Source: Euprymna scolopes (taxonomy: Eukaryota). Taken from it: DNA of 64,000 nt. Positions within the stretch are counted from its first letter, which is position 1. Each line of letters begins with the position of its first letter. The stretch lies in the NCBI GenBank assembly GCA_053919585.1, contig CM132787.1; one strand, 5' to 3'. A program made the position numbers and the translations under genes. The notes under the pieces were generated by a model, which saw only the letters and a list, made by a program, of their open reading frames with translations, did not search any database and was not told the DNA's origin. This document shows positions 59,975 to 61,915 of the stretch, piece by piece.

Positions 59975-60367
59975 AAATACCTACAGATACTAGTGTTTCA
60001 TCCTTTCGGGACACAGTGCAGTGTGACACGATTACTGCTGGTCGGGAGATTCTAACCCGGCAATGAAGTCATCTCTGACTCCATAAGCAAGGCAGAAATC
60101 GTCTCGGCCAACTTAACCGCGAGAAGTATCGTTGAAATTTAAACATTTATTTTTAACTGTTTTAACGCCTGTCAGAGTGATCTAATAATCTCTTCATGAT
60201 CTCAGTATGCGAGCTAAAGTGACCGACTTCATTTGAACTGTAAAGTGCTCAACGATAAGAAACGATTTTTTAAAAGGGGCTGACATAATTATTTACTCTG
60301 ATAATGAATAAATACCTACAGACACTAGTGTTTAATCCTTTCGGGAATCATCAGTGCAGGGTGTCAC
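59975..60367 (-). mobile_element. Tandem hammerhead-containing repeat, 335-nt period (retrozyme-like family B), gap-flanked
   Basis: Motif repeated at 59980 and 60315. Minus-strand copy 2: cctgca-CTGATGA-ttcccgaaaggat-TAAA-cactagtg-TC-tgtagg. Copy 1 keeps GAAA but has lost CTGATGA. Confidence 0.7.
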
Positions 60368-61176: not shown

Positions 61177-61429
61177 CATATATATATCATCATCATCAGG
61201 AAAATTGACGGTTTTCCTGATGATGATTCTGTTAATTTGCATTTTGTTTTTTTACTTTTTAATCCTTAGCAAATATTTTAATTAGCTAAGAGCCAAGTCA
61301 AATTTGTTCCACATGTTCAAATCCACTATTTATCAAGTTCCGAAGTTATAGATCAAACATTGGAAGAGTAGTTTGGTAGAGACTCTTCCATATACTGACA
61401 GACAAACATGATAACTTATATATATATAT

Positions 61430-61859
61430 ATTATTTTTAAAATGTAATTATCCACTGACACGTGTTTCGTCGTCTAAGACTCATCACAGTGGCTGAATAT
61501 AGCGAGATTCGAAATCGGGACCCAACGGTAATGAGCCTAAACCCTTATCCCTGGACCATCTCACCAACTGTCTGGACATATCGCGATTTACTTAGATGTT
61601 GTTTTGTTTTGGTTTTAGCGATATGTTTTGAATGAATTCAGTTATTTACGAAAGTGCCTTTTTACCTAAATGCGAGTTGGGAATAATTTTCCCTTTTAAC
61701 CAGTTTGGTACCCCCACATGCGGAGCGGTATATATATTATTTTTAAAATGTAATTATCCACTGACATGTGTTTCGTCGTCTACGACTCATCAGAATGGCT
61801 GAATATAGCGAGATTCGAAATCGGGACCCCACGGTAATGAGCCTAAACCCTTATCTCTG

Positions 61860-61863
<4 letters not shown>
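61430..61863 (-). mobile_element. Retrozyme-like family A: ~1.4 tandem copies of a 306-nt hammerhead-bounded monomer
   Basis: Hammerhead motifs at 61452-61492 (C3 to G mutation) and 61758-61798 (core intact, loop ACAT). Flanked by (TA)n and (GA)n. Confidence 0.85.

Positions 61864-61915
<52 letters not shown>

What the first reader, a model, noticed from the sequence alone, without database searches (positions are those of the whole stretch)
61430..61863. Candidate non-LTR retrozyme: 306-nt non-coding monomer bounded by hammerhead ribozymes (family A)
Seen: a 41-nt type I hammerhead motif recurs on the minus strand at 61452 and 61758, exactly 306 nt apart. The unit has no ORF, and the same family occurs near 24 kb. 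Stem III is one base pair plus the palindromic loop ACGT (ACAT in the 61758 copy). Established: metazoan non-LTR retrozymes are tandem units of a few hundred nt with type I hammerheads whose short palindromic stem III favours dimeric cleavage. They yield monomeric linear and circular RNAs and are thought to use Penelope-like RT. Inference: this is such a family, possibly undescribed in this genome, and would give a ~306-nt circRNA. The copy at 61452 has a core mutation.
Basis: partly seen in the sequence, partly recalled or inferred. Interest (0 to 1): 0.85.

Follow-up and report, generated by a model that had tools for sequence, protein, structure and literature searches.

The report
Decayed hammerhead retroelement copy, Penelope-style insertion
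This is one worn-out copy of a small, protein-less jumping element that carries a self-cutting hammerhead RNA motif and has spread to thousands of sites in this large mollusc genome; the kind is already known, but the other copies show that the ribozyme did cut its RNA in the animal.

Summary
Two type I hammerhead motifs lie on the minus strand at 61756-61800 and 61450-61494, exactly 306 nt apart. They sit inside a 136-nt direct repeat that is 96% identical. The unit has no ORF, and the same family recurs at 23981-24575.

It is not a tandem array. It is a 1.44-unit partial tandem: 101 nt, then 306 nt, then a 35-nt tail. This is one insertion of a dispersed, young family; one 27-nt stretch across the cut site has 1,546 exact copies in the 5.9-Gb genome.

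Across 90 fetched loci the copies look like Penelope-like-element (PLE) insertions:
- 3' ends are fixed at two UA-rich sites (unit positions ~35 and ~171) that run into (TA)n.
- 5' ends vary.
- Partial tandems and head-to-head inverted pairs are common.

Copy 5' ends peak at the exact ribozyme cut site (49 junctions, against 2-9 at four nearby sites and 24 at a fifth). This is fossil evidence of self-cleavage in vivo.

This locus is probably inert. Its downstream ribozyme has a C3-to-G core change and a broken stem II pair. RNA-seq gave no sign of a discrete 306-nt RNA or circle.

No partner retrotransposon was found. A weak tRNA-like fold lies just upstream of the ribozyme.

The scan has already flagged similar elements on other DNA of this genome. 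Verdict: a new member of a known kind (non-LTR retrozyme, or PLE-derived mini-element).

The parts
61865..61912 (.). (CT)n microsatellite that forms the 5' flank of the insertion
   Evidence: Read directly. The element starts at 61864.
61764..61864 (-). 5'-truncated upstream unit (unit positions 206-306). It forms the upstream arm of the 136-nt repeat and acts as a pseudo-LTR.
   Evidence: BLAST against the unit gives 94% identity; repeat family D2.
61756..61800 (-). Upstream type I hammerhead with an intact core. Stem I has one G.U pair and the stem III loop is ACAU. The predicted cut lies between 61763 and 61762.
   Evidence: Rfam RF00163 at 23.2 bits, E 0.0076 in the 1.2-kb scan; sequence. 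Family reads carry C at 61767 and G at 61795 on the + strand, which are the family-majority letters (table 3).
61457..61762 (-). The 306-nt unit between the two predicted cut sites. It is non-coding and 39% G+C.
   Evidence: The fold z-score is -0.9.
61499..61566 (-). Weak tRNA-like cloverleaf (unit positions 198-265) with A-box-like and B-box-like motifs, immediately 5' of the ribozyme
   Evidence: ARAGORN finds it only at 80% thresholds: 22 of 30 copies at the same place against 2 of 150 shuffles. ARAGORN at default settings and the Rfam tRNA model find nothing.
61450..61494 (-). Downstream hammerhead, decayed. Core C3 is G (61487) and stem II has a U.C mismatch (61477). The predicted cut lies between 61457 and 61456.
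   Evidence: Rfam at 22.5 bits; sequence. Nearly all family reads show the canonical letters at 61487 and 61477 (table 3).
61423..61456 (-). 34-nt tail after the second cut site. It is the fixed 3' end of the family and ends in UAUAUA.
   Evidence: The same end at unit position ~35 occurs in 23 of 33 and 23 of 46 sampled arms.
61417..61432 (.). (TA)n run that spans the 3' junction
   Evidence: Read directly. (TA)n follows the 3' end in most copies.
23981..24290 (-). Second locus of the same family, direct arm: hammerheads at 24008-24052 and 24254-24302, internal deletions, and an end at the 35-nt tail plus (TA)n
24289..24575 (+). Second locus, inverted arm (unit positions 186-306 then 1-165), joined head-to-head to the direct arm. 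Its hammerhead is at 24371-24415.
   Evidence: Rfam at 29.1 bits; BLAST.

Best explanation
The stretch 61423-61864 (minus strand) is one decayed insertion of a young, abundant, non-coding retroelement family. Its 306-nt unit carries a weak tRNA-like fold, a type I hammerhead with a two-pair stem III and a palindromic loop, and a 34-nt tail.

Inferred life cycle:
1. A transcript holding two ribozyme copies pairs them through the 8-nt palindrome ACACGUGU into a double hammerhead and cuts after GUC.
2. Reverse transcription is primed when a broken (TA)n target anneals to one of two UA-rich sites in the RNA (unit positions ~28-35 or ~167-172).
3. The cDNA runs towards the RNA 5' end. It stops at the cut site, stalls near the tRNA-like fold, or continues past one unit on an uncut or recircularised template.
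4. Priming from both ends of the palindromic (TA)n break gives the head-to-head pairs.

This is the insertion style of Penelope-like elements, so a PLE enzyme is the likely mobiliser, but this is inferred and no partner was identified.

What is shown: the anatomy, the family's abundance, the fixed 3' ends, the variable 5' ends, and the 5'-end peak at the cut site.

What is inferred: the dimeric cleavage, the priming mechanism, the PLE enzyme, and any RNA circle.

This copy is probably inert, because its downstream ribozyme has lost core C3.
For: Abundance and age:
- The unit has more than 4,289 first-look candidates on many chromosomes, and scored copies are 94-95% identical.
- The 27-nt stretch across the cut site has 1,546 exact copies.
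- Thirty full units differ from their majority by a median of 2%. The window copy differs by 3.6%.

Ends:
- In a less biased sample of 46 arms, 42 end at unit positions 25-36 or 141-180.
- 21 of the 46 begin within positions 241-275.
- 13 of the 46 are one unit or longer.
- 3' ends run into (TA)n, and about a third of 5' flanks are (TA)n too.
- Head-to-head inverted pairs occur in at least 12 of 30 loci and at 24 kb in the window.
- These traits, together with a 30-40-bp tail and a (TA)n bias, are those described for PLE insertions (PMC8557442).

Cleavage record, from exhaustive counts of copies whose three preceding bases all differ from the element:
- Junctions before -3, -1, +1, +2, +4 and +7 number 9, 7, 49, 6, 2 and 24.
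- Fetched examples begin exactly at A+1 after (TA)n, (CT)n, unique DNA or an inverted arm.

Ribozyme:
- 73 of 94 sampled copies keep the core and its spacing.
- The single hammerhead fold is -6.7 kcal/mol against an alternative fold at -10.1. Two copies cofold as a double hammerhead at -28.5.

Context:
- The genome has more than 15,000 GIY-YIG candidates, many inside ORFs of about 806 aa.
- One fetched PLE also ends in (TA)n about 41 nt after a hairpin-GAAACGUU motif.
Against: - No autonomous partner that shares the unit's 3' end was found.
- Both hammerheads score below Rfam's gathering threshold.
- Target-site duplications could not be defined.
- RNA-seq shows no ends at the cut site and no enrichment over genomic abundance.
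- Junctions are also frequent at +7 (24), so 5'-end hot spots of other origin exist.
- Among 30 young copies the core is no better conserved than the rest (2.6% against 1.5% changed). This is expected for neutral decay and gives no support.
Confidence: 0.8

Rival explanations
1. It is a tRNA-derived SINE of the schistosome Sm-alpha type. RNA polymerase III starts in the tRNA-like head, the hammerhead trims the transcript, and a LINE rather than a PLE copies it into the genome. The window itself holds an RTE-like LINE.
For: - A tRNA-like cloverleaf lies just 5' of the ribozyme in 22 of 30 copies at relaxed ARAGORN thresholds, against 2 of 150 shuffles.
- An unrelated hammerhead family at 24608-24645 has the same layout, with 6 of 200 shuffles passing.
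- Sm-alpha/Sj-alpha are tRNA-derived, Pol III-type SINE-like elements with a promoter followed by a hammerhead (PMC2770079, PMC6765202).
- An RTE-like LINE (RVT_1 and Exo_endo_phos domains) lies at about 39-42 kb.
- Twin priming by LINEs can also give inverted 5' parts.
Against: - Default ARAGORN and the Rfam tRNA model find no tRNA.
- A T4 run at +15 to +18 after the cut would stop Pol III before the body of the unit.
- The unit has no similarity elsewhere in the window, including the LINE.
- Partial tandems, a 35-nt tail and a (TA)n target together are the PLE signature.
Confidence: 0.12
2. One reading: this locus is an active retrozyme dimer whose two ribozymes release a ~306-nt RNA that is then circularised.
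For: - Two hammerheads lie 306 nt apart.
- The family's ribozymes can form a double hammerhead.
- Metazoan retrozymes give monomeric linear and circular RNAs (PMC7229834).
Against: - The downstream ribozyme has G at invariant C3 and a stem II mismatch. The upstream one has lost the loop palindrome.
- The copy is the most diverged of the 30 compared.
- Only 10-12 of about 1,100 reads per run match this copy at 99% or better, and no ends pile up at 61762/61763.
Confidence: 0.05
3. It is a satellite-like repeat spread by DNA-level duplication or unequal crossing-over, and the hammerhead motif is a passenger.
For: A few loci share flanks and are segmental duplicates: L008/L015/L023, L010/L022 and L017/L074.
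Against: - Most copies have unrelated flanks on many chromosomes, fixed 3' ends and graded 5' truncation.
- 5' ends peak at the cut site with single-base precision.
Confidence: 0.02

Closest known systems
Metazoan non-LTR retrozymes (Cervera and de la Pena, NAR 2020, PMC7229834)
   Same: - Non-coding unit of a few hundred nt with low G+C.
- Type I hammerhead with a short stem III that should work as a dimer.
- Thousands of copies, as in the mussel.
- Proposed link to PLE reverse transcriptase.
   Different: - Copies here are dispersed and short (mostly 0.3-1.5 units, at most 2.6 in the sample), not tandem arrays.
- No circular or monomeric RNA was seen in the libraries laid.
- A tRNA-like fold adjoins the ribozyme.
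Penelope-like elements and their non-autonomous derivatives (Craig et al. 2021, PMC8557442; Li, Clavereau and Pollet 2026 preprint, 10.64898/2026.07.22.740005)
   Same: - 5' truncation.
- Partial tandem that forms a pseudo-LTR.
- An adjacent inverted 5'-truncated copy.
- A 30-40-bp tail and a (TA)n target bias.
- A minimal hammerhead with a palindromic stem III loop.
   Different: - There is no ORF.
- No sequence match was found to the one PLE of this genome that could be fetched, so derivation from a specific PLE is unproven.
Schistosome Sm-alpha / Sj-alpha SINE-like elements (Ferbeyre et al. 1998; Laha et al. 2000; summarised in PMC6765202 and PMC2770079)
   Same: - A tRNA-related module is followed directly by a type I hammerhead.
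- Copy number is high.
- More than one unit is needed for propagation.
   Different: - The tRNA likeness here is weak.
- A T4 run follows the cut site.
- The insertion anatomy is PLE-like.
- The host is a different phylum (a mollusc).
Small PLE-associated hammerheads that cleave as dimers (Lunse, Weinberg and Breaker 2017; Forster et al. 1988; cited in PMC6765202)
   Same: Stem III is reduced to two pairs with the palindromic loop ACGU. The computed double hammerhead is far more stable than the single fold.
   Different: Activity was not assayed here. It is only inferred from copy ends.

Membership tests
Hammerhead ribozyme, type I (Rfam RF00163) | Conserved core CUGANGA ... GAAA ... NUH at a three-stem junction with an open stem I | tested here: met
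   The upstream motif at 61756-61800 has the full core, a 5-pair stem I, a 4-pair stem II and a GUC cut triplet. The downstream motif fails at C3 (G at 61487). 73 of 94 family copies keep the core and its spacing.
Hammerhead ribozyme, type I (Rfam RF00163) | Score at or above Rfam's gathering threshold (34 bits) | tested here: not met
   Scores are 23.2 and 22.5 bits, and the best family copy in the window scores 29.1. The model expects a 4-pair stem III, and this family has two pairs.
Hammerhead ribozyme, type I (Rfam RF00163) | Self-cleavage after the H17 nucleotide | tested here: inconclusive
   There is no assay. The indirect evidence is that copy 5' ends peak at +1 (49, against 7 and 6 at the adjoining positions). 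RNA-seq shows no ends at that place.
Non-LTR retrozyme | Non-coding repeat of about 170-400 nt, each unit carrying a type I hammerhead, with G+C under 50% | tested here: met
   The unit is 306 nt and 39% G+C, and its longest open frame is 58 aa.
Non-LTR retrozyme | Tandem organisation of the units | tested here: inconclusive
   This locus holds 1.44 units. In the sample, 13 of 46 arms are one unit or longer and the maximum is about 2.6 units. These are partial tandems, not arrays.
Non-LTR retrozyme | Monomeric linear and circular RNAs in vivo | tested here: inconclusive
   Four runs were laid. Family reads lie on both strands, mostly joined to unlike flanks, with no discrete monomer. The libraries are not suited to small non-polyadenylated circles.
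PLE-derived non-autonomous element | PLE insertion anatomy: 5' truncation, pseudo-LTR partial tandem, inverted 5'-truncated copy, 30-40-bp tail and microsatellite target | tested here: met
   compared with the description in PMC8557442.
PLE-derived non-autonomous element | Sequence similarity to the terminal region of an autonomous PLE of the same genome | tested here: not met
   Only one PLE could be tested (L091, with an 806-aa ORF). It shows no similarity and no canonical hammerhead. More than 15,000 GIY-YIG candidates remain unexamined, so this result is weak.
Sm-alpha-like tRNA-derived hammerhead SINE | tRNA-derived Pol III promoter directly upstream of the hammerhead | tested here: inconclusive
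   ARAGORN finds the fold only at 80% thresholds. Default ARAGORN and the Rfam tRNA model are negative. Pol III use cannot be tested with these tools, and the T4 run at +15 to +18 argues against full-unit Pol III transcripts.

The most novel reading that the evidence does not exclude
The family keeps a double fossil record. Copies that begin exactly at the cut site come from cleaved linear RNAs. Copies longer than one unit, all primed at the same two internal UA-rich sites, come from rolling-circle reverse transcription of religated circular monomers. The tRNA-like fold next to the ribozyme is functional, either as a Pol III promoter or as a handle for the tRNA ligase or the reverse transcriptase. 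It also acts as the roadblock behind the 5'-end hot spot at unit positions 241-275. If so, decapod-sized mollusc genomes reported to hold almost no SINEs would in fact carry several active tRNA-hammerhead SINE/retrozyme hybrids.
Probability: 0.25. Interest if true: 0.6.

Novelty: new member of a known kind. Interest (0 to 1): 0.35.

Why it matters
The locus itself is an ordinary dead repeat copy. The family has modest value:
- It gives a clean, assay-free readout that a minimal, dimer-dependent hammerhead cuts in vivo, because copy 5' ends land on the cut site to the base.
- It shows which template sites prime reverse transcription on (TA)n targets.
- It adds a mollusc family to the retrozyme/PLE/Sm-alpha continuum, with a tRNA-like module next to the ribozyme.
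- Short elements of this kind may sit among unclassified repeats in large mollusc genomes.

The library searches found no paper that links hammerhead ribozymes with cephalopod names beyond the PLE survey.

Tried and rejected
- Rfam at gathering thresholds found nothing in the window.
- ARAGORN at default settings found no tRNA.
- Whole-unit folding: z is -0.9 for the window copy and -0.8 to -4.4 for eight circularised copies, so there is no striking rod-like structure.
- Core against flank conservation within 30 copies has no power, and the core is not better conserved.
- Target-site duplications: only one clear long case (L013). Most are masked by (TA)n or absent.
- Copies that end exactly at GUC: only 6, so the cleaved 3' end is not the usual priming site.
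- RNA evidence for monomers or circles: none in two raw-read RNA runs and two contig sets.
- Partner search:
  - No RT or GIY-YIG ORF lies next to any of 90 copies. Only Tc1/mariner fragments were found.
  - The window holds an RTE-like LINE but no PLE.
  - One abundant PLE (L091) is unrelated.
- Earlier-notes look-ups by sequence and by a longer word list returned nothing.
- PMC5785218 is not held in the paper library.

Full report
**Observation**

On the minus strand, the stretch 61423-61864 holds a 136-nt direct repeat (61423-61558 and 61729-61864). The two arms are 96% identical and start 306 nt apart.

Each arm carries a type I hammerhead. Rfam's Hammerhead_1 model matches 61756-61800 (23.2 bits) and 61450-61494 (22.5 bits) in a 1.2-kb scan. 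Neither reaches the gathering score of 34, and the window has no Rfam match at gathering level.

Read directly, the upstream motif has:
- a 5-pair stem I with one G.U pair;
- the core CUGAUGA;
- stem II GUCG/CGAC with loop UAGA;
- GAAA;
- a stem III made of the 15.1-16.1 pair plus one C-G pair around the loop ACAU;
- the cut triplet GUC, with the cut between 61763 and 61762.

The downstream motif has G in place of core C3 (61487) and a U.C mismatch in stem II (61477). Its stem III loop is ACGU.

A loose core pattern matches five times in the window and never in 100 shuffles.

**What the locus is**

The window lies on contig C5 of a 5.9-Gb assembly of 925 contigs. Run labels such as 'mollusc metagenome' mark the organism as a mollusc.

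The 306-nt unit has more than 4,289 first-look candidates, and scored copies are 94-95% identical on many contigs. The 27-nt stretch GTC plus the next 24 nt occurs 1,546 times exactly. Thirty full units differ from their majority by a median of 2% (range 0.7-3.6%). The window copy is the most diverged of these. So this is a young, abundant, dispersed family, and the window holds an older copy of it.

**Anatomy of the copies**

I number the unit from the C of GUC as position 1.

In the first 30 loci, chosen for full coverage, nearly every copy reads as follows: a variable 3' part of the unit, one full unit, then positions 1-35.

A less biased sample was fetched with the 78-nt ribozyme-plus-tail and gave 46 arms:
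- 23 arms end at positions 25-36 and 19 end at positions 141-180.
- 21 arms begin within positions 241-275.
- 17 arms are under 120 nt, 16 are 120-305 nt, and 13 are one unit or longer.

Both 3' end sites are UA-rich in the unit (UAUAUAUA at 28-35; CAUCUA at about 167-172) and run straight into (TA)n in the genome. About a third of the 5' flanks are (TA)n as well. Others are (CT)n, as in the window, or (CA)n.

Head-to-head inverted pairs are common, in at least 12 of the 30 loci. The 24-kb locus of the window is one such pair.

Craig et al. describe exactly this set of traits for Penelope-like elements:
- strong 5' truncation;
- a partial tandem that forms a pseudo-LTR;
- an adjacent inverted 5'-truncated copy;
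- a 30-40-bp tail;
- a preference for (TA)n (PMC8557442).

The '306-nt monomer bounded by two ribozymes' at this locus is therefore a single 1.44-unit insertion, not a piece of a tandem array.

**Fossil record of cleavage**

I tested this idea here. The test used exhaustive pattern counts that require all three bases before a chosen unit position to differ from the element.

| Junction before position | Count |
|---|---|
| -3 | 9 |
| -1 | 7 |
| +1 | 49 |
| +2 | 6 |
| +4 | 2 |
| +7 | 24 |

- The fetched +1 cases begin at the A that follows GUC. They are preceded by (TA)n, (CT)n, unique DNA or an inverted arm. They run to position ~35, ~171, or through a whole unit.
- The +7 cases are mixed. Many sit at the TAATTA palindrome of inverted junctions.
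- After correcting for the three-base filter, roughly 7% of copies that contain this segment start exactly at the cut site.
- The peak is one base wide and is not explained by (TA) microhomology.

I read this as good indirect evidence that template RNAs were cut by the ribozyme in the animal.

Copies that end exactly at GUC are rare (6). Priming is therefore internal and not at the cleaved 3' end.

**Ribozyme properties**

- Of 94 distinct ribozyme copies sampled, 73 keep the core and its spacing, and 53 also keep all stems paired. The usual stem III loop is ACGU.
- The single hammerhead fold is worth -6.7 kcal/mol and loses to an alternative fold at -10.1.
- Two copies cofold at -28.5 kcal/mol into a double hammerhead whose stem III is the 8-nt palindrome ACACGUGU.
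- This is the known behaviour of minimal PLE, newt and viroid hammerheads (PMC6765202).
- In the window copy, the upstream loop has lost the palindrome and the downstream core is mutated. Family reads show the canonical letters at 61487, 61477, 61767 and 61795 (table 3). These are private decay changes, and this locus is most likely inert.

**RNA evidence**

Two raw-read RNA-seq runs and two contig sets were laid on 61380-61880 at 90% likeness:
- Reads cover the element on both strands about equally.
- 73-75% of reads run on into unlike sequence.
- Only 10-12 of about 1,100 reads per run match this copy at 99% or better.
- No ends pile up at 61762/61763.
- The depth profile is high over the ribozyme, tail and first half of the unit, and low over positions ~165-250. 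It has the same shape in all four runs, including one that may be DNA, and it mirrors how often each segment occurs in genomic copies.

This looks like passive co-transcription of many copies. It neither shows nor excludes small circles, because the libraries are not designed for them.

**The tRNA-like module**

- ARAGORN at default thresholds finds no tRNA, and Rfam's tRNA model gives no match.
- At 80% thresholds ARAGORN places a cloverleaf at unit positions 198-265 in 22 of 30 copies, against 2 of 150 shuffles. The copies are not independent, so this amounts to one observation at roughly P = 0.01.
- An unrelated hammerhead family at 24608-24645 also has a relaxed-threshold cloverleaf with a good T-arm just upstream (6 of 200 shuffles).
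- This layout recalls the tRNA-derived Sm-alpha SINE of schistosomes.
- A T4 run at +15 to +18 would end Pol III transcripts soon after the ribozyme, so a promoter role is doubtful.
- The 5'-end hot spot at 241-275 coincides with the 3' edge of this fold. That suggests a roadblock to reverse transcription (inference).

**Mobiliser**

- The genome is rich in PLEs. There are more than 15,000 GIY-YIG candidates, many within ORFs of about 806 aa and often in tandem or inverted pairs.
- The one PLE I could fetch (L091) has a 960-nt pseudo-LTR and ends in (TA)n about 41 nt after a hairpin-GAAACGUU motif. That layout is analogous to the unit's ribozyme-tail-(TA)n end. However, it has no canonical hammerhead and no similarity to the unit.
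- No RT or endonuclease ORF adjoins any of the 90 copies. The copies are therefore not terminal repeats of coding elements.
- The window holds an RTE-like LINE but no similarity to the unit.

**Comparison and verdict**

The element works like a non-LTR retrozyme and like a non-autonomous PLE derivative. A 2026 preprint argues these are the same thing.

It meets the ribozyme-core, non-coding and PLE-anatomy criteria. It fails Rfam's score threshold and the single partner test. It is inconclusive for tandem organisation, RNA circles and tRNA derivation.

The scan has already reported several similar hammerhead families elsewhere in this genome. I rate it a new member of a known kind with modest interest. 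The useful addition is the single-base 5'-end peak at the cut site and the two fixed priming sites.

Noticed in passing
window 24608-24780 (-): A second, sequence-unrelated hammerhead (stem II GUUGU/ACAAC, longer stem III) lies directly downstream of a tRNA-like stretch with a good T-arm (GGTTCAATCC). It is followed by a 12-nt tail and (TA)n. The layout matches family A but the sequence differs. Its stem I pairs poorly in this copy.
   Followed up: partly
window 59975-60346: A 37-nt direct repeat has a spacing of 335 nt. Rfam finds no hammerhead there even at E 10. The minus strand shows GAUGAAAC followed by the palindrome ACUAGU.
   Followed up: partly
window 38143-42600 (-): An RTE-like LINE: RVT_1 in the ORF at 39333-39833 and Exo_endo_phos in the ORF at 41247-41726.
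   Followed up: no
L091 (G000:C5:35825200-35829400, minus strand): An abundant young Penelope-like element with an 806-aa ORF, a C-terminal GIY-YIG domain and a 960-nt pseudo-LTR. Instead of a canonical hammerhead it has UUGAAGA, a 5-pair hairpin and GAAACGUU about 41 nt before its (TA)n end. The same 3' end abuts a family A copy at a shared (TA)n in L028.
   Followed up: partly
window 24880-24935 (-); also the flanks in L026 and L038: Another recurrent element end (a G+C-rich hairpin followed by AAATACGCTTAAATAT) sits next to (TA)n tracts beside family A copies. This suggests that several elements target the same microsatellites.
   Followed up: no
window 1517-1658, 11762-11878, 21633-21822 (-) and 3041-3147 (-): Sub-threshold Rfam matches to U2 snRNA (22-32 bits, gathering score 46) and to 5S rRNA (31 bits, gathering score 38). 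They may be snRNA- or 5S-derived repeats or pseudogenes.
   Followed up: no
L036, L038, L039 (5' junctions): Three of about 75 sampled arms begin at the same place inside the ribozyme (UAGACGACGAAAC, the stem II loop), 17-20 nt before the cut site. This may be a further 5'-end hot spot.
   Followed up: no
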